Below are positions 8,887 through 58,961 of a stretch of 64,000 bases of DNA, piece after piece. How positions within the stretch are numbered: the stretch's first letter is position 1; the number at the start of each line of letters is the position of its first letter. The stretch lies in the sequence record NC_005083.2; one strand, given 5' to 3'. The position numbers were made by a program, and so were the translations under genes. The notes below the pieces were generated by a model. That model did not search any database and was not told where the DNA came from. It saw only the letters and a list, made by a program, of their open reading frames with translations.

Positions 8887-9511
8887 TTATGTAATTCACA
8901 CTTCGATTAGTGACAAAAGTCAGCTAAACCAACTAGTGATGTTTGTCGGGTCTTTCATCGAGACGCACAAAAAAGGTCGCGTGGTCTGCGTGACTGATCT
9001 TGAACTTGATTTCACGATGCCTCGACTGTCATTTGAGAAAAAACTACCCGAAGAGTACGTTTTCATTTCAGTTGACAATCTATTTTTACAAAAAACATAC
9101 GGCGTTGTTAGCTACATTGACAGTGGTACTTGGCGATGTACTTGGCAAAAGAATGATCATGATGATTTCGTCATTAAAAAGCATGGCGAAAGAAGCGGGT
9201 TGATTCACCCTGATATTGCAATTGCAAATTACAATGTTTCGAGACATGGCGATCTCGACATGTATTACAACGCGCTTCGTTACATTGAGAGCGCAATCAC
9301 GATCAACTGCAAAGACTTTGCCCCTGCTGCTGAGAATAAAATCAACAGCTTTTACACGCTTGTATTTCCATGGGAGATTTATTTTCACGTTATGATCACT
9401 TACCAAGAGTATATTGATTCTGAATACGTTGAGCGAGTTCGCGCTAACTGTCATAAGTTCGCACACTCGGTTTATTACAGAAAATCAGGGTTGTTACGTG
9501 ATGGGTTATGA
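8879..9511 (+). CDS. hypothetical protein, possible GT-A glycosyltransferase
   Basis: N-terminal beta-alpha-beta ending VVCVTD; SYIDS resembles DxD region; weak. Confidence 0.35.
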   Translation: MYDYVIHTSISDKSQLNQLVMFVGSFIETHKKGRVVCVTDLELDFTMPRLSFEKKLPEEYVFISVDNLFLQKTYGVVSYIDSGTWRCTWQKNDHDDFVIKKHGERSGLIHPDIAIANYNVSRHGDLDMYYNALRYIESAITINCKDFAPAAENKINSFYTLVFPWEIYFHVMITYQEYIDSEYVERVRANCHKFAHSVYYRKSGLLRDGL

Positions 9512-10184
9512 TGAGATAATTTTAGTATCTGGTCTTGATAGTTTAGTTCTATATGAATTTCTTGAACGAAAGCCACACCCTGTTTACTTTAAATGGGGTT
9601 TTGCTATCGACGACATTGAAATGGCTGCTTTGCCTGAAGAAACAACTATCATAGAAATGCCAGAGATTTTGCATTTGAAACATGATCCGTATGAGTTCAA
9701 GACACCAAGAAATCCCGATTTAATTGGTCGGAATACGTTGATGTTTAACTCAGTTTTCCATGCATTCAGACCAAACGTAATTTATCGCGGGATGTTGAAA
9801 GGTGATGATTTCTATTACGACGCATCGCCTACGCATTCAGATGAAATCGCAGCTATGTGGTCGAAAATGCTGAATAAAGAGTGTCGAATTGAACAACCGT
9901 TCAAAGACAAAACGAAACGTGACATAATGCAAATGGCGGTCGAATACGGTATTGATGCGAATTCATTACAGCATTGTTACAATCGAGAACACAACTGCGG
10001 TCGATGTAGCAAGTGTGTGGATGCACATGTTAATTCTATGTACACCGACAACCCAGACATCATGTGGCTGAAACGAATAGTTAATGACTCGGGTATGGCA
10101 TCATTGGCTAATCACATGTTTGGTGTTGATACAGTTGACAGAATAAAGGAATTTCTAGATGAATTTGATCGAACAGACTGCTGA
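9501..10184 (+). CDS. QueC-like PP-loop ATPase
   Basis: SGLDS, GRN, TKRDI, CY..CGRCSKC. Confidence 0.8.
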   Translation: MGYDEIILVSGLDSLVLYEFLERKPHPVYFKWGFAIDDIEMAALPEETTIIEMPEILHLKHDPYEFKTPRNPDLIGRNTLMFNSVFHAFRPNVIYRGMLKGDDFYYDASPTHSDEIAAMWSKMLNKECRIEQPFKDKTKRDIMQMAVEYGIDANSLQHCYNREHNCGRCSKCVDAHVNSMYTDNPDIMWLKRIVNDSGMASLANHMFGVDTVDRIKEFLDEFDRTDC

Positions 10185-26213: not shown

Positions 26214-26287
26214 TTAAAGAAAAGGGTTGACAGATGTCAGCCCTTTTTTGTATGCTTCGTTTGCTAAATCGACAAAGAGTGAGAAAT

Positions 26288-26860
26288 ATGAAAAAGCTAA
26301 TGACACTGCTTCTAGCAGTTTGCGCGTTCAATGCATCTGCAAGCAATGTATGTCACGTCAAGTTCAACGGTCAAGAACTATCCGAGAAGCAATGGCACAA
26401 TGTTCGTGCTGTGTTCATCAACGGTTGGTACAATGACTTGAGTTGGTCACTTGCTGCTATCGCTATTGTCGAATCTAGTGCTGGTGAGCAAATGATTAAC
26501 AATCGAACGAAAGATTATGGTTTGATGCAAAACAACATCAAAACTGCGACTGCTCGATTGAAACGTTGGGAGAAAGCAGGTCGAGACTTCGGTCCCTATG
26601 ATCTCAACAATCCAGAAGATGTAAAAACAATATTGCTTACTGACCGTACGGTTTCCGTTCAGCTTGCCATTGAAGAGCTTGAATACTGGAAGAAGATACG
26701 CGGTAAAAACAACTGGCGTGAAATCTATGCGAGTTACAATGGGGGTTTTTACAAAGATAAAACATGGGAAGCGCGTGCTGAAAAGTACTCTGAAAAAATC
26801 GTAATGACTATGCGCAAACTAAAACCTTGCAAAGAGCAACTATTGAGAGGGTTATACTAA
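26288..26860 (+). CDS. SLT-family lytic transglycosylase with signal peptide
   Basis: AIAIVESS, YGLMQ, ASYNGG. Confidence 0.85.
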   Translation: MKKLMTLLLAVCAFNASASNVCHVKFNGQELSEKQWHNVRAVFINGWYNDLSWSLAAIAIVESSAGEQMINNRTKDYGLMQNNIKTATARLKRWEKAGRDFGPYDLNNPEDVKTILLTDRTVSVQLAIEELEYWKKIRGKNNWREIYASYNGGFYKDKTWEARAEKYSEKIVMTMRKLKPCKEQLLRGLY

Positions 26861-43707: not shown

Positions 43708-44232
43708 CTATTTGCGCCCTTTACGATTTGCCTTATTTGCTTTTCTTTTTGCTCTACGCAACTCTTTGCGTTTTGCGATTTTGTCTGCACGTCTAACTGC
43801 ATCATAATCCGCAGCACACGACGCAGCAAACGCATCAGGCTTGAAAACGGGTTCTTGGCCCACGTATCCCAAGATAGTGCCCTTAGCTTCGTTATACGCA
43901 ACGTGTGAACGATGGGATGGGTCTGGGTTGATGTCAACGTGAACTTCAAACCCACGAGTACCACACATTGGCTTAACACGCAGAGCAGTTTCACCTGCTT
44001 TATAGACTTCATTCATCAAACGACTACGAATACCATCTTTACACGACATGTACGCTGGTTCAGTTTCGATAGATTTGAATACTTGAGCGCCTTTGCTACC
44101 CTCAAGGTGAATGATGATTACAGTAGCGTAACTAATCATATCACTCTTACGCTTGCTATCACACCCAACATAAATCGTACTGTTCGGATGACTGTTATTG
44201 ATAGCTGTTTCAATTGCTTCCCAATCGAACAT
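43708..44232 (-). CDS. RNase H-like protein (DUF458/YkuK family)
   Basis: IYVGCDS, RLMNEV, EVHVDIN, KPDAFAASCAAD. Confidence 0.8.
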   Translation of the reverse strand: MFDWEAIETAINNSHPNSTIYVGCDSKRKSDMISYATVIIIHLEGSKGAQVFKSIETEPAYMSCKDGIRSRLMNEVYKAGETALRVKPMCGTRGFEVHVDINPDPSHRSHVAYNEAKGTILGYVGQEPVFKPDAFAASCAADYDAVRRADKIAKRKELRRAKRKANKANRKGRK

Positions 44233-44282
44233 TTTCACCTCTGTACAAAAAAGGGCAGCACAATGCCGCCCTTATCACTTAT

Positions 44283-45719
44283 TTAAAAGCTGTAGCGTTC
44301 AACGCCTACAGTTTTCAGCATGATCTTGACTGGCTCAAGCTCACCACCCAACAGTGAAGTCAGGATAGATGGGCTACAACCCGATACCAGTGCAGTACCC
44401 GCTTCGCCAGCTTTAACCGGAACGTTGCCAAGACGACCACGAATGTTCCAGAAGACTAGTTGTGGCATTTCATAGCCAGCACGTGCGTACATAGCTTTGA
44501 TTGCGTCGAAGTTTGCACGTTCGCCACGACCGTACCAGCCACCACCAGTATTTGCTTGGTCGAATTCCATGTCGCTCATGATAAGCAACTTAGTCGGCAT
44601 TTCTTCTTGTGAAAGATTTGCACGTTTCGCACGTTCTAACAGAACGTTGAAGCACTTACCGATGTTTGTGCTCATGTCTTCGCCTGATCGATTCATGTTG
44701 TCAAGACGCTCTTTTAGTGAGCTACCGCGTAACTGGTGGAAGTGCGGATCGCTTGAGAACGAAATGAACTGATCTTTGAAGATGCCTTCATTGCGTTCAG
44801 CAACATAGATGCCAAGAGACATTGCAACTTGCTTACAAGTCACACCTGAACGATCTGCACCTGCGTTGATTGGCGTGCTCATAGAGCCAGACACGTCAAC
44901 AACTGGGATGATGCGCTCATCAGAGCCTTCCATGTAGTTCGGCAGGGCTTTCCATTGCTCGTTCGCTACAGACGCATTACCATGACTAACGCTCTTAACG
45001 ACATCATATGGGAACAAGGCACCAGCGTTGATCTTCGCTTCACCTTTTTGAAGCGACTCGATGTAGCTTGTGTAACGAACAGAAGCGTTACGACCGAATG
45101 CTTTTTGATAACGAGCAGACGCTACAGATGGCAACTTACCGAAGTCGATTGCATCCCATTCTTGCGCACACATCTTCTGTTCAACAGTGTCAGACAAAAG
45201 TGCTAGAATCTTACGCCACTGCTTCGCAGTTACACCAAGAGACTTGATTGTGCGCTTGAACACATGACCGTTTTTGCTGTTCTCGCGTGGGAACCACTTC
45301 GCAGCGAGACCGTTCTTGTCGTTTACAATCGCATTTGACCACAGTGTGATCGCGTCTTTTTCAAGTCTTGTGCCGAAAGCAGAAATCAAGTCGTCGAAGC
45401 GACCTAGTTCTGGAATTTTCGACATTACAGCACGAGCTACGTCAGGCTGCTCATTACAAAGCTTAGTGAATAGAGTACGGAAAGTACCACGTTCACCCGC
45501 ACCACCGCGAACATCACGAGACCACAAAAGAATGCGTGTCGCTAGTTCTGGGTTTTCTGCAAACGCACGACCGAACAGTGTTTTAGACTGATCGTTACCA
45601 CGCATAGCAGCAATACCGAAGAACAAGTTTAGACACTCGTTACCTGAAGTGCTGTGAGTAACTGCACCGTTTGCTGTACGTGAATCGTTTGATTGCATAG
45701 CGTTCATAAATGCTGACAT
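44283..45719 (-). CDS. DUF2828-family TROVE-like plus vWA protein (Ro60-like)
   Basis: RDVRGGAGER, GRFDDL, AAKWFPRE, VDVSGSM, SDMEFD, LVFWN. Confidence 0.85.
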   Translation of the reverse strand: MSAFMNAMQSNDSRTANGAVTHSTSGNECLNLFFGIAAMRGNDQSKTLFGRAFAENPELATRILLWSRDVRGGAGERGTFRTLFTKLCNEQPDVARAVMSKIPELGRFDDLISAFGTRLEKDAITLWSNAIVNDKNGLAAKWFPRENSKNGHVFKRTIKSLGVTAKQWRKILALLSDTVEQKMCAQEWDAIDFGKLPSVASARYQKAFGRNASVRYTSYIESLQKGEAKINAGALFPYDVVKSVSHGNASVANEQWKALPNYMEGSDERIIPVVDVSGSMSTPINAGADRSGVTCKQVAMSLGIYVAERNEGIFKDQFISFSSDPHFHQLRGSSLKERLDNMNRSGEDMSTNIGKCFNVLLERAKRANLSQEEMPTKLLIMSDMEFDQANTGGGWYGRGERANFDAIKAMYARAGYEMPQLVFWNIRGRLGNVPVKAGEAGTALVSGCSPSILTSLLGGELEPVKIMLKTVGVERYSF

Positions 45720-45754
45720 TGTTTATTCCTCATATTAAATTGCTGTAAAATGTC
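45715..45754 (-). promoter_or_regulatory. CAGCAA-motif hairpin sequestering RBS and start codon
   Basis: gacatt-tta-cagcaa...gagga...aATGtc on minus strand. Confidence 0.7.
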
Positions 45755-45810
45755 GTTTTGATGTGATGATTATACACGGATTTGAACCCGTGTAAACACT
45801 TTTTTCAATT

Positions 45811-46457: not shown

Positions 46458-46824
46458 CAATATATTCCTTAATCGGCTTAGAAAAGTGACGAATACAAGA
46501 ACTGTCAAGTCGTTTACGACCATCACCATCTATATCAGGTAGTGTGTATTCGTCATTAAACGGCTGACCGCTTTCTTTCGCAATCTCATAGGCATCGGCT
46601 CGATTGAAGTATTCACCACAATAGTTGATAAACCCCTGACCGCGATCCCCGAGTTCGTTTCGATGTTCATATGTACAACCTAGTTCTTTCAATAACTTAA
46701 AGACTGATTGCATGTTTCGACCGAAATGGCAGCTATCAGCAACAACAATGTCGCGCACTTCACCGTTCGGTAGTGTCACTCGAATTGCATTAGCAGCAGA
46801 CGATATTACATTGACGTGCGACAT
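46450..46824 (-). CDS. conserved phage hypothetical protein
   Basis: QGFIN..GEYFNR..A..IAKESGQ motif. Confidence 0.65.
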   Translation of the reverse strand: MSHVNVISSAANAIRVTLPNGEVRDIVVADSCHFGRNMQSVFKLLKELGCTYEHRNELGDRGQGFINYCGEYFNRADAYEIAKESGQPFNDEYTLPDIDGDGRKRLDSSCIRHFSKPIKEYIDG

Positions 46825-47162
46825 GTATCGTACCTCATAAAAATTGAACCAACGCGCTTATACTGACCAGAGTGAGAAAGCAACAGAGCCATTTTACTAT
46901 GACCAACGGGATTGCTTGTCACTAGAACAACAGTGCGCGGAAAATTACGATGATCAATCGCATGAGAGAGAATATCATACCCCTCTCTACCAACATCATC
47001 ACCTAGGTCATTGTCCATGAATAGAGTGATGTCAGTTAGATTTGTGTGCTTGACGAAATTCATACCGTCTTCGAATGTACGAAGAACTAGCTTTTCATCG
47101 TCGCGTACGTAATCTGACGTGAACTTATTAATGTCACGCAGATCATCAATCATAACGTACAT
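46806..47162 (-). CDS. cyclic-phosphate-processing receiver (cREC)-like domain
   Basis: IDDLR..RTFED..MDNDLG..GYDIL. Confidence 0.7.
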   Translation of the reverse strand: MYVMIDDLRDINKFTSDYVRDDEKLVLRTFEDGMNFVKHTNLTDITLFMDNDLGDDVGREGYDILSHAIDHRNFPRTVVLVTSNPVGHSKMALLLSHSGQYKRVGSIFMRYDTCRTSM

Positions 47163-51580: not shown

Positions 51581-51655
51581 TGGTGGACACGCAGGGAGTC
51601 GAACCCTATCTTCCTCATTGCAAGTGAGGCGCTTTCCCAATTAAGCTAACGGCCC
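51581..51655 (-). tRNA. tRNA-Ala(TGC)
   Basis: cctca-ctTGCaa-tgagg. Confidence 0.9.
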
Positions 51656-55300: not shown

Positions 55301-55416
55301 TGGTAGTCGGGGCTGGATTCGAACCAGCGACCACGTGCTTAACAGGCAATTGAAGGAGTGCTGGAGCGATACTTGTCAGTATCATTCTTCGTGCTCTACC
55401 ACTGAGCTACCCGACT
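55301..55416 (-). ncRNA. tRNA-mimic RNA (GACA hairpin, CAGCAC)
   Basis: acceptor, D arm, T arm, ACCA; gatact-GACA-agtatc-gctc-CAGCAC. Confidence 0.8.
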
Positions 55417-55421
55417 ATGAA

Positions 55422-55943
55422 TTATTTAACTTTGAACTTCAAATTACGCCAGTCAAAGTTTCGTTTGTTCTTTGTGTTGTAGAACGTGCCCCAATCAATA
55501 GCAATCGGACAGTTCTTACTACCTACACGAGCGATAAAGACATCGTGAGTCTCGCTGTAACGCTCTCTAAGCTCTTTTAAACGCTTATCGTAGTTAGCGA
55601 TATACTCTGCACACGCTTTGTTGTAAGCTGCTTTAGAGAAGCGTTCGTCACTCGAAAATACATTACCCAGATAAGGTCGAATAACACGAACTCGTTCTTT
55701 AGACCAACCCATACTAAAGCTGTTTTCAATCTCACCTGAGATTTCACCAGTCTTCTTACATCTAGCAAGAATGACCCAGCAACGTTCACGCCGAAAATCT
55801 TTTCGTACGTACACGTTAACGTGCTTGTCAATGTACTCTTGATAACGAGCGTTATACTCAGCACGCAGTTTATTGCGCACTTCAGGCGACATTGCAGCCC
55901 GTTCTTCTTTCGAAAACGCTTGTGCGAATTTCAATGGTTTCAT
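55422..55943 (-). CDS. hypothetical basic protein
   Basis: gagga RBS before ATG 55943. Confidence 0.6.
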   Translation of the reverse strand: MKPLKFAQAFSKEERAAMSPEVRNKLRAEYNARYQEYIDKHVNVYVRKDFRRERCWVILARCKKTGEISGEIENSFSMGWSKERVRVIRPYLGNVFSSDERFSKAAYNKACAEYIANYDKRLKELRERYSETHDVFIARVGSKNCPIAIDWGTFYNTKNKRNFDWRNLKFKVK

Positions 55944-55956
55944 TATAATTTCCTCT

Positions 55957-56196
55957 TGGCGCCGCTCGTGTGAATCGAACACACGTCAAACACAACACCT
56001 CGTCCACCCAATTAGAGTTTCGAAGTAAGAGCTAATCAGCATTTCGGAGCAGTCGAGCGTTATTTCTACGAGTGAGCTTTCGACAACTCACACGCACTTT
56101 CTACCCGGTCCCAGTGATTCGGTACCAACGCAGGTTGCGAACCTACGTCTGCACTAATGCTGGGAAAACACTGCGTATTGTACACCAGTTAGCGGC
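55957..56196 (-). ncRNA. 240-nt RNA with tRNA-like termini
   Basis: gccgct/agcggc-GCCA; gtgtgTTCGAttcacac; several internal hairpins. Confidence 0.7.
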
Positions 56197-56198
56197 AT

Positions 56199-56429
56199 TT
56201 AAAGATAGCTATCAAAGACAGCATCATCAACTTCTTCAATATTGATGTCAGCGTAACACTCATTCGCAATTGCTTGAATTTCATCTATTGAAACTGTACC
56301 TGCGTACAATACAACAGCGTCGTTCGGAATCACGACATCACACATGTATTTGTTAAACATTGCAGTTCTGAAATCAGAATCAACAGAGTAACCGTGCATT
56401 GATGTGATAACTAGCAATTTATGTGACAT
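56199..56429 (-). CDS. hypothetical protein
   Basis: gagga RBS; own promoter upstream. Confidence 0.6.
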   Translation of the reverse strand: MSHKLLVITSMHGYSVDSDFRTAMFNKYMCDVVIPNDAVVLYAGTVSIDEIQAIANECYADINIEEVDDAVFDSYL

Positions 56430-56508
56430 AATGTTTTCCTCGTGTAGTTGATAATGTGTATACTACACGTTGATGAAACGCCTGTCAACAACTTTTTCAA
56501 ATTATTTT

Positions 56509-56585
56509 TGGTAGCCCCTCTCGGATTCGAACCGAGAACCTGACGATTATGAGTCGTCTGCTACTACCGTTACAGCTAAGGGGCT
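56509..56585 (-). tRNA. tRNA-Met/Ile2(CAT)
   Basis: gacga-ctCATaa-tcgtc. Confidence 0.9.
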
Positions 56586-56952
56586 ATCGTTCTAGAAATC
56601 TACCGACTTTAGCAGCGAAGATGTTTGCTTCTTCTGCAATCAAAGCAGTTGATTTCATTTGATGAAAAGCGTCTTGTTGATGCAGAACATCTAGTTTACC
56701 AGCGCATTTCATCAGTTCTTTTACTGATTGCATAATCTCAATGTTATCAAGCTGACTAGTATCAGGGTGATGATTTAGATTATCTAAGATAGGGAGTACT
56801 TGTTGATAGCAACCCATACCGATGAAGTTTATCATAAGTCTGTACTGCATTTCAACAGCAAATGTACAATATTTTCGAAGATTGCGTTTTACAATCTCAC
56901 AGCGATGCAAGATACAATCAAGTTCGTCATTTATGTCATCAAACTTATTCAT
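56584..56952 (-). CDS. hypothetical protein
   Basis: gagg RBS before ATG 56952. Confidence 0.6.
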   Translation of the reverse strand: MNKFDDINDELDCILHRCEIVKRNLRKYCTFAVEMQYRLMINFIGMGCYQQVLPILDNLNHHPDTSQLDNIEIMQSVKELMKCAGKLDVLHQQDAFHQMKSTALIAEEANIFAAKVGRFLER

Positions 56953-56966
56953 AAAACCTCGAAAAT

Positions 56967-57090
56967 TGGTGGAGAGTGATGGATTTGAACCACCGACCAA
57001 AAGATTTACCTAGTTATTAAGGTTTGCAGCATGAATGCTTGTCAGTATTCTTTAACATTCTTTTGCTCTACCAGACTGAGCTAACTCTCC
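56967..57090 (-). ncRNA. tRNA-mimic RNA (GACA hairpin, CTGCAA)
   Basis: ggagagt/actctcc-ACCA; gaatact-GACA-agcattc-atg-CTGCAA. Confidence 0.8.
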
Positions 57091-57096
57091 ATAATT

Positions 57097-57214
57097 TGAG
57101 GGTGAAGTACAGGACTCGAACCTGCGACCTCCGGCGTGCATGTAAATGCAGAATGAAATCTTATCAGACTTCGTTTTTTGAGCCGGCATTCTAACCAACT
57201 GAACTAACTTCACC
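57097..57214 (-). ncRNA. tRNA-mimic RNA on an Asp-like shell (GATA hairpin, CTGCAT)
   Basis: ggtgaag/cttcacc; ccggc/gccgg; gaagtct-GATA-agatttc-att-CTGCAT. Confidence 0.8.
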
Positions 57215-57326
57215 ATAGTGATCAACAGCCCTCAGAATACCCGCAGTCTACACCCTATAATAAGGGACTATACTGAGTCGTTTAATGAGTCGGATAACTC
57301 AACTGTTAATCAAATTGTTAAAAACA

Positions 57327-57460
57327 TATAGTTGCGGGTGCAGGATTCGAACCTACATCACGATCTTATGAATGATATGCGAAATTGATTGCCGTACAGA
57401 TTCTTATCAGAATCAGTTTTGTGCTACGTGTGCTACCACTTACACCAACCCGCAACTATA
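57327..57460 (-). ncRNA. tRNA-mimic RNA (GATA hairpin, CGGCAA), extended acceptor
   Basis: 13-15 bp terminal stem; gattct-GATA-agaatc-tgta-CGGCAA; aggTTCGAatcct. Confidence 0.8.
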
Positions 57461-57529
57461 TGCTTTCGGGATGCTTACGCAGGTTCTTCTCTACGTAAGC
57501 ACAGATCCTCAATGTATATTTTGCCTTAG

Positions 57530-57718
57530 CTAATCACAACACAACCCAATATCGTGCGCTTTAATTACGGGATTGATGACCCGTTCGCATGTGATTAGCG
57601 TAAAAGTATGATTACGCACCTTTTCTTCTTCAATGTCCAAGGCAAAGAGGACTATGAATACCAGTGCGAGAAGATATACAATCAAATTGCTCACCTCGCT
57701 TAATAAGTGAGAGTACAT
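57530..57718 (-). CDS. small membrane protein
   Basis: hydrophobic LIVYLLALVFIVLFAL. Confidence 0.45.
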   Translation of the reverse strand: MYSHLLSEVSNLIVYLLALVFIVLFALDIEEEKVRNHTFTLITCERVINPVIKAHDIGLCCD

Positions 57719-57845
57719 TGGTCGAGTGTAACGGAATCGAACCGTTCCCACGATCTCCCTATGATATGCGTAAATTGGTTGCTGAATATAATCATGTCTG
57801 ATTACAGTATGCTACGTGTGCTGCCACTACACCAACACTCGACCA
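57719..57845 (-). ncRNA. tRNA-mimic RNA (GACA hairpin, CAGCAA), paralog of 57327
   Basis: taatca-GACA-tgatta-tatt-CAGCAA; aacggTTCGAttccgtt. Confidence 0.8.
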
Positions 57846-58258: not shown

Positions 58259-58513
58259 TTAAACGGAAATGATAATGCCGCTTTCAGTCTCACCTCGTTC
58301 AAGCGCAGCGTGCTTGATCTGAAGTTGTGATACTGCTTGCTGAAGTTCAATAATAGCTTTGTCATAAAGCTTGTTGTTCTCTTTAAGCAAAGCAATCTGA
58401 TCGGTCTGCATACCAATGATGTACGTTAGTAGAACAACGTTCTCATCAGTCGTCAGCGTTTCAGGCGCTTCATTGTACTTCTTCAGCACCGCTTCGGTAG
58501 ATAGATCAGTCAT
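58259..58513 (-). CDS. coiled-coil hypothetical protein
   Basis: coupled to gp57B. Confidence 0.6.
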   Translation of the reverse strand: MTDLSTEAVLKKYNEAPETLTTDENVVLLTYIIGMQTDQIALLKENNKLYDKAIIELQQAVSQLQIKHAALERGETESGIIISV

Positions 58514-58961
58514 TATTAGCAACCCATTCTAGATCTAATGGTTCGATATATTCATCGACAAGGCGAACCTCTGTATTGATGAACATAGGGGTAATTACGT
58601 CGTCATAAGACAATGTGACGTGCGGAGTATAGTCAGGGTAATCGTGAGTACCACCGATAGAGATAAGGTCTTCGTGACGTTCTACAAGAGCAGGACATGA
58701 CATCTTAGCAACGACCGCGTGTTTACCGTCTTGCGTTTTCCAACAGTCAACTTGTTCAACAGTGGCAACGAAAGTGGTATCTACAACGGGCACATCAATT
58801 TGCTTACGACTATAAAGCACAGTCACGTGGAATTTATCGGGATCTAACGGATTTTTTAGACGAAGCGTTTTTTGCAAGCGAACTAGTTCTTGCTTACTTG
58901 CTTCGTCTAATTTGATACCAACGTAAGTTCCCTGACTCTCAAGGAACTTAGATAGTTTCAT
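58506..58961 (-). CDS. 57B: gp57B, 2H phosphoesterase / RNA-ligase-like
   Basis: HVTVLYS and PHVTLSY 2H motifs; synteny. Confidence 0.88.
   Translation of the reverse strand: MKLSKFLESQGTYVGIKLDEASKQELVRLQKTLRLKNPLDPDKFHVTVLYSRKQIDVPVVDTTFVATVEQVDCWKTQDGKHAVVAKMSCPALVERHEDLISIGGTHDYPDYTPHVTLSYDDVITPMFINTEVRLVDEYIEPLDLEWVANND

What the first reader, a model, noticed from the sequence alone, without database searches (positions are those of the whole stretch)
55301..57845. Five tRNA shells whose anticodon arm is replaced by a conserved GAYA-hairpin + CNGCA module
Seen: minus-strand elements at 55301, 56967, 57097, 57327 and 57719 keep an acceptor stem, D arm and T arm, but carry a ~50-60 nt insert in place of the anticodon arm. 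Each insert has a 6-7 bp hairpin with a GACA/GATA loop followed exactly 10 nt later by CAGCAC, CTGCAA, CTGCAT, CGGCAA or CAGCAA. Stem sequences differ yet remain paired (gatact/agtatc, gattct/agaatc, taatca/tgatta, gaagtct/agatttc), and the shells look like different tRNA ancestors. Known: bacterial Y RNAs (YrlA) fuse a tRNA-like D/T/acceptor domain to a Ro60-binding stem. Inference: these are Y-RNA-like tRNA mimics bound by the nearby TROVE/vWA protein, possibly decoys for host anticodon nucleases or part of RNA repair.
Basis: partly seen in the sequence, partly recalled or inferred. Interest (0 to 1): 0.95.

Follow-up and report, generated by a model that had tools for sequence, protein, structure and literature searches.

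The report
Phage tRNAs with Ro-protein docking arm
Five tRNA-shaped genes of vibriophage KVP40 each carry the same small extra RNA arm; that arm also sits on the mRNA leader of the phage's Ro60-like protein and beside that protein's gene in many unrelated phages, so these RNAs are most likely the protein's partners (phage 'Y RNAs'), a pairing I could not find described.

Summary
The window is Vibrio phage KVP40. The five minus-strand elements are real, and three are annotated as tRNA pseudogenes. All five carry a 6-7 bp hairpin with a G-N-N-A loop, followed 10 nt later by CNGCA. One part of the description is wrong. In E1, E2, E4 and E5 the anticodon arm is not replaced. A 41-50 nt arm is inserted into it, and deleting the arm in silico restores a canonical cloverleaf.

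The arm is a conserved module found in at least 82 distinct tRNA-like genes of uncultured phages. A circularly permuted, free-standing form lies on the same strand within 500 nt of homologues of the KVP40 DUF2828/DUF7788 gene. In KVP40 this form sits in that gene's own 5' leader, over the ribosome-binding site and start codon. The protein's predicted fold matches Ro60 (TROVE ring plus vWA with MIDAS). Rfam has no family for the module.

Best reading: these are Y-RNA-like tRNA mimics docked by the Ro60-like protein, and the leader copy is a feedback operator. Binding, expression in KVP40 and biological role are untested. Splicing of the arm is the main rival. Two recent papers guessed that such phage proteins have Y RNAs among nearby tRNA genes or transcripts; none identified them.

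The parts
55301..55416 (-). E1: tRNA-shaped RNA with encoded CCA, annotated tRNA-Pseudo-3. The insert at 55349-55389 lies between tRNA positions 28 and 29. The hairpin is at 55368-55383 and CAGCA at 55359-55363. The retained anticodon arm is CG|TGC CUGUUAA GCACG.
56967..57090 (-). E2: tRNA-shaped RNA with CCA, annotated tRNA-Pseudo-4. It has an intact 5-bp anticodon stem (AAAGA/UCUUU) and loop AUGUUAA. The 47-nt insert at 57005-57051 follows the loop. The module stem has one A.C mismatch.
57101..57213 (-). E3: tRNA-shaped RNA, annotated tRNA-Pseudo-5, with no encoded CCA. The stem CCGGC/GCCGG closes a 46-nt loop (57136-57181) that holds the module. No anticodon-like loop is present.
57331..57456 (-). 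E4: tRNA-shaped RNA, unannotated in KVP40, with no CCA. The insert at 57377-57426 lies between positions 28 and 29. The retained arm is CG|AUC AUUCAUAA GAUCG, an 8-nt loop.
57719..57845 (-). E5: tRNA-shaped RNA with CCA, unannotated in KVP40. The insert at 57766-57814 lies between positions 28 and 29. The retained arm is CG|AUC AUAGGGA GAUCG.
45706..45761 (-). Free-standing (circularly permuted) copy of the module in the 5' leader of the Ro60-like gene: AAAAC-GACAUU-uua-CAGCAAUU-N17-AAUGUC. The loop contains the Shine-Dalgarno sequence GAGGA and the 3' stem strand contains the AUG. I infer it is an autoregulatory operator.
   Evidence: 33.1 bits, E = 0.0012; same leader in phage 1.081.O
45769..45797 (-). 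Promoter-like GTTTACA, about 16 nt, then TATAAT, immediately upstream of the leader copy. Read by eye and not covered by a scan.
   Evidence: same arrangement in phage 1.081.O
44283..45719 (-). KVP40.0300, 478 aa: a Ro60-like protein (DUF2828 helical-repeat ring plus DUF7788 vWA domain with a DxSxS MIDAS motif). It is the proposed protein partner.

Best explanation
E1-E5 are structured tRNA mimics. Each has acceptor, D and T arms, and four of the five keep an anticodon-like arm. Each carries one added arm that is a docking site for the phage's Ro60-like protein KVP40.0300. In function they are the phage's Y RNAs.

The docking module has three parts:
- a 6-7 bp helix whose last two pairs are C-G and U-A;
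- a G-N-N-A loop (G-A-Y-A in the five KVP40 elements) closing that end;
- at the other end, 3-4 nt and then single-stranded CWGCAAYC.

The fixed 10-nt distance from loop to CNGCA suggests a protein that measures the helix.

The same module, opened at the loop end and closed at the other end, lies in the protein's own mRNA leader across the ribosome-binding site and start codon. Protein not occupied by the tRNA-like RNAs would then shut off its own translation.

Shown: the anatomy, conservation and covariation of the module; its linkage to the gene; the Ro60-like predicted fold.

Inferred: binding, feedback control, and the role of the RNP. My best guess for the role is counter-defence or tRNA-directed conflict, with the protein tethered to a full tRNA look-alike whose 'anticodon' is free to vary.
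For: (1) The same tRNA-plus-module genes lie within 1 kb of a DUF2828+DUF7788 gene in three unrelated phages: Cronobacter S13, Aeromonas APT65 and Synechococcus BUCT-ZZ01.

(2) A model of the free-standing form found 52 matches in 983 kb. All 52 are on the gene's strand and 44 of 52 lie within 500 nt of the gene. They fall in 39 of 80 IMG/VR loci. About 31 of the 52 were not seeds.

(3) At least 7 loci have the copy abutting or overlapping the Shine-Dalgarno sequence or start codon.

(4) Reverse tests:
- Of 58 viral loci with a tRNA-embedded module, 15 hold the gene within the stored stretch. Of 22 pattern matches without the hairpin, none do.
- Of 12 free-standing pattern matches with a perfect stem, 7 hold the gene, against 1 of 104 without a perfect stem.
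- In cellular genomes the same pattern behaves as chance: 16 of 120 matches have the hairpin and none has the gene.

(5) Stem covariation is strong in both forms. Acceptor stems also differ compensatorily between orthologues.

(6) The predicted fold matches Ro60 from Thermus phage phiLo, D. radiodurans and Xenopus (E = 3e-8 to 4e-6, TM 0.48-0.59).

(7) In mycobacteriophage LeBron a family member is followed by a sub-threshold YrlA-like match (39.8 bits).

(8) No protein neighbour is conserved next to the gene; only the RNA is.

(9) Literature:
- Bas63 gp130 is Ro60-like, lies upstream of tRNA genes, and counters the ppl defence system (10.1101/2024.10.10.617714).
- Listeria phage CKA15_055 is Rsr-like, and three very highly transcribed non-coding regions lie within 2 kb upstream (PMC12282133). 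Three tandem copies of the module lie in that region.
Against: - No direct evidence of binding, and no evidence of expression or RNA size in KVP40.
- In KVP40 the gene is 9.6-12 kb from the five elements.
- Only about half of the 80 homologous loci show a motif within 6 kb. The one Felixounavirus examined (wV8) shows none.
- The seeds of both models were picked partly by pairing, and for the free-standing form also by nearness to the gene. This inflates the covariation and position statistics for the seeds themselves.
- Removing the insert restores perfect tRNAs, which is also what an intron would look like.
Confidence: 0.6

Rival explanations
1. The inserts are introns of a new, protein-dependent kind. 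They are cut out and the halves joined, giving ordinary phage tRNAs: E1 and E2 Asn(GUU), E5 with anticodon AGG, and so on. The Ro60-like protein would act as a chaperone or recognition factor.
For: - Deleting the insert in silico gives canonical cloverleaves that ARAGORN calls, for E1, E2, E4, E5 and for elements of other phages.
- 49 of 82 elements have an encoded CCA.
- E2's insert is compatible with the canonical 37/38 intron position.
- KVP40-like phages carry a 2H phosphoesterase ('RNA ligase') gene nearby. The Listeria phages have RtcB about 1.3 kb from the gene.
Against: - The same module occurs outside any tRNA, in mRNA leaders and downstream of the gene.
- The insert position varies from 26/27 to 29/30, or lies after 38. 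E3 yields no anticodon loop.
- 'Anticodon' triplets differ between near-identical shells, and some loops have 8 nt.
- E1 and E2 would only duplicate the two normal Asn tRNA genes.
- There is no ribozyme or group I signature.
- No endonuclease or ligase is consistently adjacent to the gene.
Confidence: 0.15
2. They are working tRNAs that keep the extra arm, are aminoacylated and decode. The arm would serve to mark or protect phage tRNAs through the Ro60-like protein.
For: - The L-shape elements are complete. U33, A37 and A38 are conserved: loop-flank difference is 0.04 per site.
- CCA is encoded in many elements.
- The arm leaves the body near position 26. From my own knowledge of tRNA structure, this is roughly where the long variable arm of class II tRNAs emerges, so the ribosome might tolerate it.
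Against: - Triplets change among near-identical bodies, for example GUC, GUU and UCU.
- There are 8-nt loops and unusual anticodons (AGG, UCA).
- E3 has no anticodon loop.
Confidence: 0.12
3. The module is an RNA processing or stability signal, or a site for some other factor. Its nearness to the DUF2828 gene would reflect shared transcription units, not binding.
For: The copies lie in leaders and 3' regions of one operon-like context, often in tandem arrays. The tRNA-embedded copies in KVP40 are about 10 kb from the gene.
Against: - The linkage holds across phages of Gammaproteobacteria, Cyanobacteria and Firmicutes with otherwise unrelated neighbourhoods.
- The motif predicts the gene in reverse searches.
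- The protein belongs to a fold known to bind adjacent non-coding RNAs.
Confidence: 0.08
4. They are dead tRNA genes disrupted by a small mobile insertion, as the GenBank 'pseudo' label implies.
For: GenBank marks E1-E3 as pseudogenes.
Against: - Distinct shell types are each conserved from KVP40 to a cyanophage and an Aeromonas phage.
- Acceptor and module stems change in a compensatory way.
- At least 82 distinct intact elements exist in viral contigs.
- A promoter-like sequence (read by eye, not scanned) sits directly upstream of one S13 element.
Confidence: 0.03

Closest known systems
Bacterial Ro60 (Rsr) with YrlA-type Y RNAs (Rfam RF02553; Chen et al. 2014, PMC4201824)
   Same: A TROVE-ring plus vWA protein is encoded beside small RNAs that contain tRNA-like D, T and acceptor elements. 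Several RNA paralogues occur per genome.
   Different: - The protein is a far-diverged family (Pfam DUF2828/DUF7788, not TROVE).
- The RNA motif is a helix plus GNNA plus CWGCAAYC, not the GNCGAAN0-1G helix.
- In YrlA the RNA ends form the Ro-binding stem and the acceptor is closed. Here the acceptor is open, often has CCA, an anticodon-like arm is kept, and the docking module is an internal extra arm.
- The YrlA model does not match (29.8 bits against 69).
Mycobacteriophage 'Ro-like RNA binding protein' with an adjacent YrlA-like RNA (for example LeBron gp53)
   Same: Same protein family as KVP40.0300 (31.5% identity over the full length), with a non-coding RNA immediately downstream.
   Different: The RNA there is YrlA-like (39.8 bits, below the gathering score). 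It is not the CWGCAAYC module and not a full tRNA with an inserted arm.
Bas63 gp130 (Felixounavirus) and Listeria phage CKA15_055
   Same: - Both are Ro60-like phage proteins next to tRNA genes.
- gp130 was found experimentally to counter the ppl defence.
- CKA15_055 lies downstream of very abundant non-coding transcripts.
- Both author groups guessed that Y RNAs hide among nearby tRNA genes or transcripts.
   Different: - Neither paper identifies an RNA motif.
- In the Felixounavirus relative wV8 I found no copy of the module.
- In CKA15 I find three free-standing copies between a promoter-like sequence and the gene.
- That Bas63 gp130 belongs to this family is my inference from its gene context and from 46% identity of other Felixounavirus homologues.
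Ribosomal-protein and T4 translational operators that mimic the protein's main RNA ligand
   Same: A copy of the ligand motif sits over the Shine-Dalgarno sequence and start codon of the protein's own mRNA.
   Different: This is inferred from sequence only. No repression has been measured.
Archaeal and eukaryal intron-containing tRNAs
   Same: There is an insertion in the anticodon arm, and its removal restores a cloverleaf.
   Different: - The positions are mostly 26-29.
- No splicing endonuclease is known in these phages.
- The same sequence occurs outside tRNAs.
T4 stable RNAs C and D (species 1 and 2) in the tRNA cluster
   Same: They are small stable RNAs of unknown role encoded within a T4-type tRNA cluster. 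RNA C has a T arm and an acceptor-like end.
   Different: They have no module: neither model matches the T4 locus L004. I saw no DUF2828 homologue annotated in the T4 locus I looked at.

Membership tests
YrlA / Y RNA (RF02553) | Match to the Rfam covariance model at or above the gathering score (69 bits) | tested here: not met
   29.8 bits. The match runs from the T arm of E3 to the D arm of E2, so it is an artefact of two adjacent tRNA-like genes.
YrlA / Y RNA (RF02553) | Encoded in the same genome as, and usually beside, a Ro60-type (TROVE + vWA) protein gene | tested here: met
   The gene is 9.6-12 kb away in KVP40 and under 1 kb away in S13, APT65 and BUCT-ZZ01. The Ro60-like fold is supported.
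YrlA / Y RNA (RF02553) | Ro-binding helix formed by the RNA's 5' and 3' ends, with the conserved GNCGAAN0-1G motif (PMC4201824) | tested here: not met
   The ends form a tRNA acceptor stem. The conserved motif is a helix plus GNNA plus CWGCAAYC, placed internally.
YrlA / Y RNA (RF02553) | tRNA-like D arm, T arm and acceptor-like stem | tested here: met
   Rfam tRNA matches of 49.8-55.5 bits for E1-E3. ARAGORN calls all five.
YrlA / Y RNA (RF02553) | Physically bound by the Ro60 orthologue | not testable with these tools
   Needs RIP, CLIP or EMSA.
Ro60 / TROVE protein family (for KVP40.0300) | Ring of helical repeats followed by a vWA domain with a MIDAS motif | tested here: met
   AlphaFold2 model with pLDDT 78.5 and pTM 0.77. 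The top 7 PDB matches are all Ro60/TROVE over the full length. D275, S277 and S279 are invariant.
Ro60 / TROVE protein family (for KVP40.0300) | Sequence match to Pfam TROVE or to solved Ro60 proteins | tested here: not met
   Pfam gives DUF2828 and DUF7788 only. A sequence search of the PDB finds only designed armadillo-repeat proteins.
tRNA (RF00005) | Cloverleaf match at or above the gathering score | tested here: met
   E1-E3 score 49.8-55.5 bits against a threshold of 29. E4 and E5 are found only by ARAGORN intron mode or after insert removal.
tRNA (RF00005) | Uninterrupted 5-bp anticodon stem with a 7-nt loop in the gene as encoded | tested here: not met
   A 39-50 nt insert lies in the stem or loop of all five.
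tRNA (RF00005) | Anticodon conserved among orthologues | tested here: not met
   The triplet differs at 0.50 per site, against 0.27 for the shell and 0.04 for the loop flanks. Some loops have 8 nt.
tRNA (RF00005) | Aminoacylation and decoding | not testable with these tools
   -
Intron-containing tRNA | Removal of the insert restores a canonical tRNA | tested here: met
   True for E1, E2, E4 (8-nt loop) and E5, but not E3.
Intron-containing tRNA | Self-splicing (group I) core, or a canonical 37/38 position with a bulge-helix-bulge | tested here: inconclusive
   No group I or other ribozyme match. Only E2 fits position 37/38. Bulge-helix-bulge geometry was not modelled rigorously.
Intron-containing tRNA | Spliced product observed | not testable with these tools
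   Needs RNA-seq or northern blots.

The most novel reading that the evidence does not exclude
A widespread phage ribonucleoprotein in which complete tRNA look-alikes, with conserved loop geometry but fast-changing 'anticodons', are tethered through an added arm to a Ro60-like ring. The RNP would serve as bait, decoy or sensor against host tRNA-targeting or other defence systems, and the protein's level would be set by a mimic of the arm on its own mRNA.
Probability: 0.25. Interest if true: 0.9.

Novelty: new variant of a known kind. Interest (0 to 1): 0.78.

Why it matters
The DUF2828/DUF7788 protein family is large. A tblastn search found it in 710 of 50,697 deposited phage records, including Felix O1-like, P100-like, cluster L mycobacteriophage, Campylobacter and T4-like phages. 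It has at least 7,878 protein clusters in metagenomes. One likely member has an experimentally found counter-defence phenotype. No RNA partner has been defined for it.

This finding offers a concrete, sequence-defined RNA ligand and a candidate operator, so the family's function becomes directly testable. It would also:
- reclassify the recurrent 'pseudo-tRNAs' and 'tRNAs with introns' in phage annotations as a functional RNA class;
- extend the Ro60/Y RNA principle to a new topology, a full tRNA with an added docking arm;
- raise the question of why the 'anticodon' of these mimics varies so fast.

Tried and rejected
- **T4 stable RNAs C and D as homologues.** I fetched and read them. They have no module and neither model matches them.
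- **Existing Rfam families.** Gathering and E-value scans of the window and of 18 other loci found only tRNA, one group I intron, one sub-threshold ROOL match and one sub-threshold YrlA match.
- **The YrlA hit in the window.** It is an artefact of adjacent genes.
- **Single-sequence folding.** The z-scores are only -1.2 to -2.9 and the minimum-energy folds are unreliable, so I did not use them as evidence.
- **A conserved protein partner next to DUF2828** (nuclease, ligase). None was found among 147 neighbours.
- **The module in Felixounavirus wV8 and Aeromonas phage Aeh1 flanks.** Not found. The wV8 88-nt 'tRNA-OTHER' reads by eye as an ordinary long-variable-arm tRNA with a GUA (Tyr) anticodon.
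- **A permissive regular expression for the free-standing form.** It gave 300 hits against about 165 in shuffles, so it was too noisy and I replaced it with covariance models.
- **A bare 14-base sequence pattern.** Most matches are chance unless the stem is also required.
- **Pseudogene reading.** Rejected on conservation and covariation.
- **Papers I could not obtain.** The KVP40 genome paper and two Y RNA reviews are not held. The supplement of Chen et al. 2014 is not held.
Full report
**Identity and observation**

The window is Vibrio phage KVP40 (AY283928.2; window position = record position - 124000). It holds the phage's tRNA cluster. ARAGORN finds 28 ordinary tRNAs, all on the minus strand.

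The five flagged elements lie at the upstream end of that cluster. Rfam's tRNA model matches E1, E2 and E3 at 49.8-55.5 bits, each with a 45-54 nt insertion in the anticodon region. ARAGORN in intron mode calls all five. GenBank lists E1-E3 as tRNA-Pseudo-3/4/5 and leaves E4 and E5 unannotated. The near-identical phage phi-pp2 annotates all five as tRNAs of various kinds.

E2's stem has one A.C mismatch. A covariance model of the module hits exactly these five sites in the 64 kb window and nothing else.

**Correction to the anatomy**

The anticodon arm is not replaced in four of the five elements.

- In E1, E4 and E5 the insert (41, 50 and 49 nt) sits between tRNA positions 28 and 29. It splits a 5-bp anticodon stem whose 3' strand is continuous. 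E1, for example, reads CG|TGC CUGUUAA GCACG.
- In E2 a complete stem (AAAGA/UCUUU) and the loop AUGUUAA come first, and a 47-nt insert follows the loop.
- E3 alone has no anticodon-like loop.

When the insert is deleted in silico, ARAGORN calls canonical tRNAs:

| Element | ARAGORN call after insert removal |
|---|---|
| E1 | Asn (GTT) |
| E2 | Asn (GTT) |
| E4 | tRNA with an 8-nt loop |
| E5 | Pro (AGG) |

Elements from other phages behave the same way. So these are whole tRNA shapes with one added arm.

**The arm is a conserved module found far beyond KVP40**

A blastn search found related elements in three unrelated phages: Cronobacter phage S13, Aeromonas phage APT65 and Synechococcus phage BUCT-ZZ01. 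Distinct shell types are each shared between KVP40 and one of these phages.

The module consensus is:

- an A-rich lead-in;
- a 6-7 bp helix ending in C-G and U-A;
- a G-N-N-A loop;
- 3-4 nt, then CWGCAAYC.

Orthologues in KVP40 relatives exchange the whole stem while keeping it paired. In E5, for example, TAATCA/TGATTA becomes CTTACT/AGTAAG. On 31 modules, 96.8% of cells pair, all six pairs show double changes, and 0 of 500 shuffles do as well.

Of the 80 loci listed, 58 had the full hairpin, although only two of its six pairs were fixed by the pattern. Pooled with the loci fetched earlier, these stretches gave 82 distinct elements of 105-140 nt (all but one 105-128) with an intact T stem and acceptor stem. 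Of these, 49 have an encoded CCA.

The same pattern in bacterial and archaeal genomes behaves as chance. Only 16 of 120 matches have the hairpin, and their flanks lack the consensus.

**The protein**

The ORF at 44283-45719 (KVP40.0300) matches Pfam DUF2828 and DUF7788 and PHROG 850, 'RNA-binding protein'. Sequence search finds no solved relative.

An AlphaFold2 model (pLDDT 78.5, pTM 0.77) gave seven top PDB matches, and all seven are Ro60/TROVE proteins matched over the full length:

- Thermus phage phiLo Ro60;
- D. radiodurans Rsr;
- Xenopus Ro60.

The E-values are 3e-8 to 4e-6 and the TM-scores 0.48-0.59. The next matches are vWA domains. The MIDAS residues D275, S277 and S279 are invariant.

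The family is large. It has at least 7,878 protein clusters and homologues in 710 deposited phage records of many hosts. The mycobacteriophage members are annotated 'Ro-like RNA binding protein'.

**Linkage of RNA and protein**

In S13, APT65 and BUCT-ZZ01 the tRNA-plus-module genes lie within 1 kb of a DUF2828+DUF7788 gene.

Around 80 homologous genes in IMG/VR I found a second, free-standing form of the module: AAA-[AG-N5]-yua-CAGCAAUC-N7-40-[N5-CU]-G-N-N-A. It is a circular permutation of the tRNA-embedded form. The helix and both conserved single strands are the same. The helix is closed on the CAGCAAUC side and open on the GNNA side.

A covariance model built from 21 such copies gave 52 matches in 983 kb:

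- all 52 are on the gene's strand;
- 44 of 52 lie within 500 nt of the gene, a zone that makes up about 4.5% of the searched space;
- they fall in 39 of 80 loci.

About 31 of the matches were not seeds, and these again show fully compensated stems.

At least seven copies abut or overlap the gene's Shine-Dalgarno sequence. In KVP40 the leader copy (45706-45761) has the Shine-Dalgarno sequence in its loop and the AUG in its 3' stem strand, downstream of a GTTTACA/TATAAT promoter-like sequence. Phage 1.081.O has the same leader.

Tandem arrays also occur: four copies in APT65, three in Listeria phages CKA15 and LP-125, and two in L081.

Two reverse tests agree:

- The gene is present in 15 of 58 stored stretches that carry a tRNA-embedded module, against 0 of 22 without the hairpin.
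- It is present in 7 of 12 stretches with a perfect-stem free-standing motif, against 1 of 104 without.

No protein-coding neighbour of the gene is conserved.

**Caveats on these statistics**

- The seeds for the free-standing model were chosen for pairing, for strand and for lying within 1.5 kb of the gene. The seed-based covariation count and part of the position bias are therefore circular. The non-seed matches and the reverse tests are not.
- The stored stretches are short (1-15 kb), so 15 of 58 is a lower bound on co-occurrence.
- About half of the homologous loci show no copy within 6 kb. The one Felixounavirus examined (wV8) showed none.

**Interpretation**

I think the module is the docking site of the Ro60-like protein. 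E1-E5 would be its Y-RNA-like partners, and the leader copy a feedback operator.

- The logic for the operator is the one established for ribosomal-protein and T4 translational repressors. This rests on my own knowledge and was not tested here.
- A family member in mycobacteriophage LeBron is followed by a sub-threshold YrlA-like match (39.8 bits against 69). This ties the family to classical Y RNAs (Chen et al. 2014, PMC4201824).

The role of the RNP is not established. Three pointers exist:

1. Within groups of near-identical shells, the 'anticodon' triplet differs at 0.50 per site. The shell differs at 0.27 and the loop flanks (positions 32, 33, 37, 38) at 0.04. Some loops have 8 nt. This fits a mimic that keeps anticodon-loop geometry without a fixed decoding identity.
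2. Bas63 gp130 is a Ro60-like protein directly upstream of tRNA genes. A knockout screen found that it counters the ppl defence system (10.1101/2024.10.10.617714). That gp130 belongs to this family is my inference from gene context and from 46% identity of other Felixounavirus homologues.
3. In Listeria phage CKA15 the homologue is found in virions, and three very highly transcribed non-coding regions lie within 2 kb upstream (PMC12282133). The one region with published coordinates coincides with a ROOL-like RNA. The three module copies lie in the unannotated 395 nt between a promoter-like sequence and the gene.

**Rivals**

Splicing of the insert is the serious rival, because removing it restores cloverleaves. 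Five observations count against it:

- the module occurs outside tRNAs;
- the insert positions vary;
- E3 gives no anticodon loop;
- the triplets are variable;
- E1 and E2 would be redundant with two normal Asn tRNA genes, and no linked nuclease or ligase was found.

Other rivals are working tRNAs that keep the arm, a processing signal unrelated to the protein, and pseudogenes. They are treated in the rival list. The pseudogene reading is contradicted by conservation and compensatory change.

**Novelty**

Rfam 15 has no family for either form. Eight full-text searches found no description of the module or of tRNAs with this arm. Two recent papers guessed that Y RNAs might hide among tRNA genes or transcripts near such proteins, without identifying them.

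I file this as a new variant of the Ro60/Y RNA kind. The protein fold and the principle are the same. The RNA motif, the topology and the proposed autoregulatory copy are new.

Noticed in passing
L217 971-1522 (Listeria phage LP-125); the same region in CKA15 is L341 about 989-1480: A ROOL-like RNA (Rfam RF03087, 87.4 bits, just under the gathering score of 99.1) lies between two tRNA genes about 1 kb upstream of the Ro60-like gene. It coincides with the most highly transcribed region reported for CKA15 (record 26,236-26,727), which the authors had first annotated as three small ORFs.
   Followed up: partly
window 43708-44238 (-) and 46806-47162 (-): The Ro60-like gene is flanked by an RNaseH-like PF04308 protein immediately downstream. 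This neighbour is conserved in phages 1.081.O and D480. Four ORFs upstream lies a cREC_REC 'cyclic-phosphate processing receiver' domain protein, a domain its Pfam description names for cyclic-phosphate processing. Neither is a conserved neighbour across the wider family.
   Followed up: partly
window 51581-51655 (-): KVP40 tRNA-Pseudo-1 scores 44.9 bits with Rfam's tRNA model but is not called by ARAGORN. Its loop reads CUUGCAA (anticodon UGC, Ala) with a possible G3:U70. It could be the phage's otherwise missing Ala tRNA, with a weak acceptor stem.
   Followed up: no
window 58506-58961 (-) (gp57B homologue); L089, L090, L091: The gp57B homologue just upstream of the five elements is annotated in newer relatives as 'RNA ligase / cyclic nucleotide phosphodiesterase' (2H phosphoesterase). 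The same gene borders the T4 tRNA cluster.
   Followed up: no
L340 about 575-600 (Vibrio phage D480): In D480 a homing endonuclease gene has replaced the upstream region of the Ro60-like gene. The core UUACAGCAAUG now overlaps the start codon itself, and I could find no pairing partner for a stem.
   Followed up: no
L006 2200-2480 (-) (Aeromonas phage APT65); L341 2150-2440 (+): Free-standing modules occur as tandem arrays (four and three copies) between a promoter-like sequence and the Ro60-like gene. Each copy has a different but fully paired stem.
   Followed up: partly
L028, L029, L038 about 9250-9950 (+); L062 8267-8382; L084 5358-5485: Other long (112-149 nt) tRNA-like genes with Leu/Ser-type D arms and different inserts lie 2-4 kb downstream of DUF2828 homologues. 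They do not match either module model and may be a further variant.
   Followed up: no
L081 11708-11934 (+): A group I intron (Rfam, 71.5 bits) lies in an IMG/VR phage contig that also carries the Ro60-like gene.
   Followed up: no
PMC12282133, Table 1: The CKA15 homologue (CKA15_055) was detected in purified virions with 57% sequence coverage, although it is not a structural-module gene.
   Followed up: no
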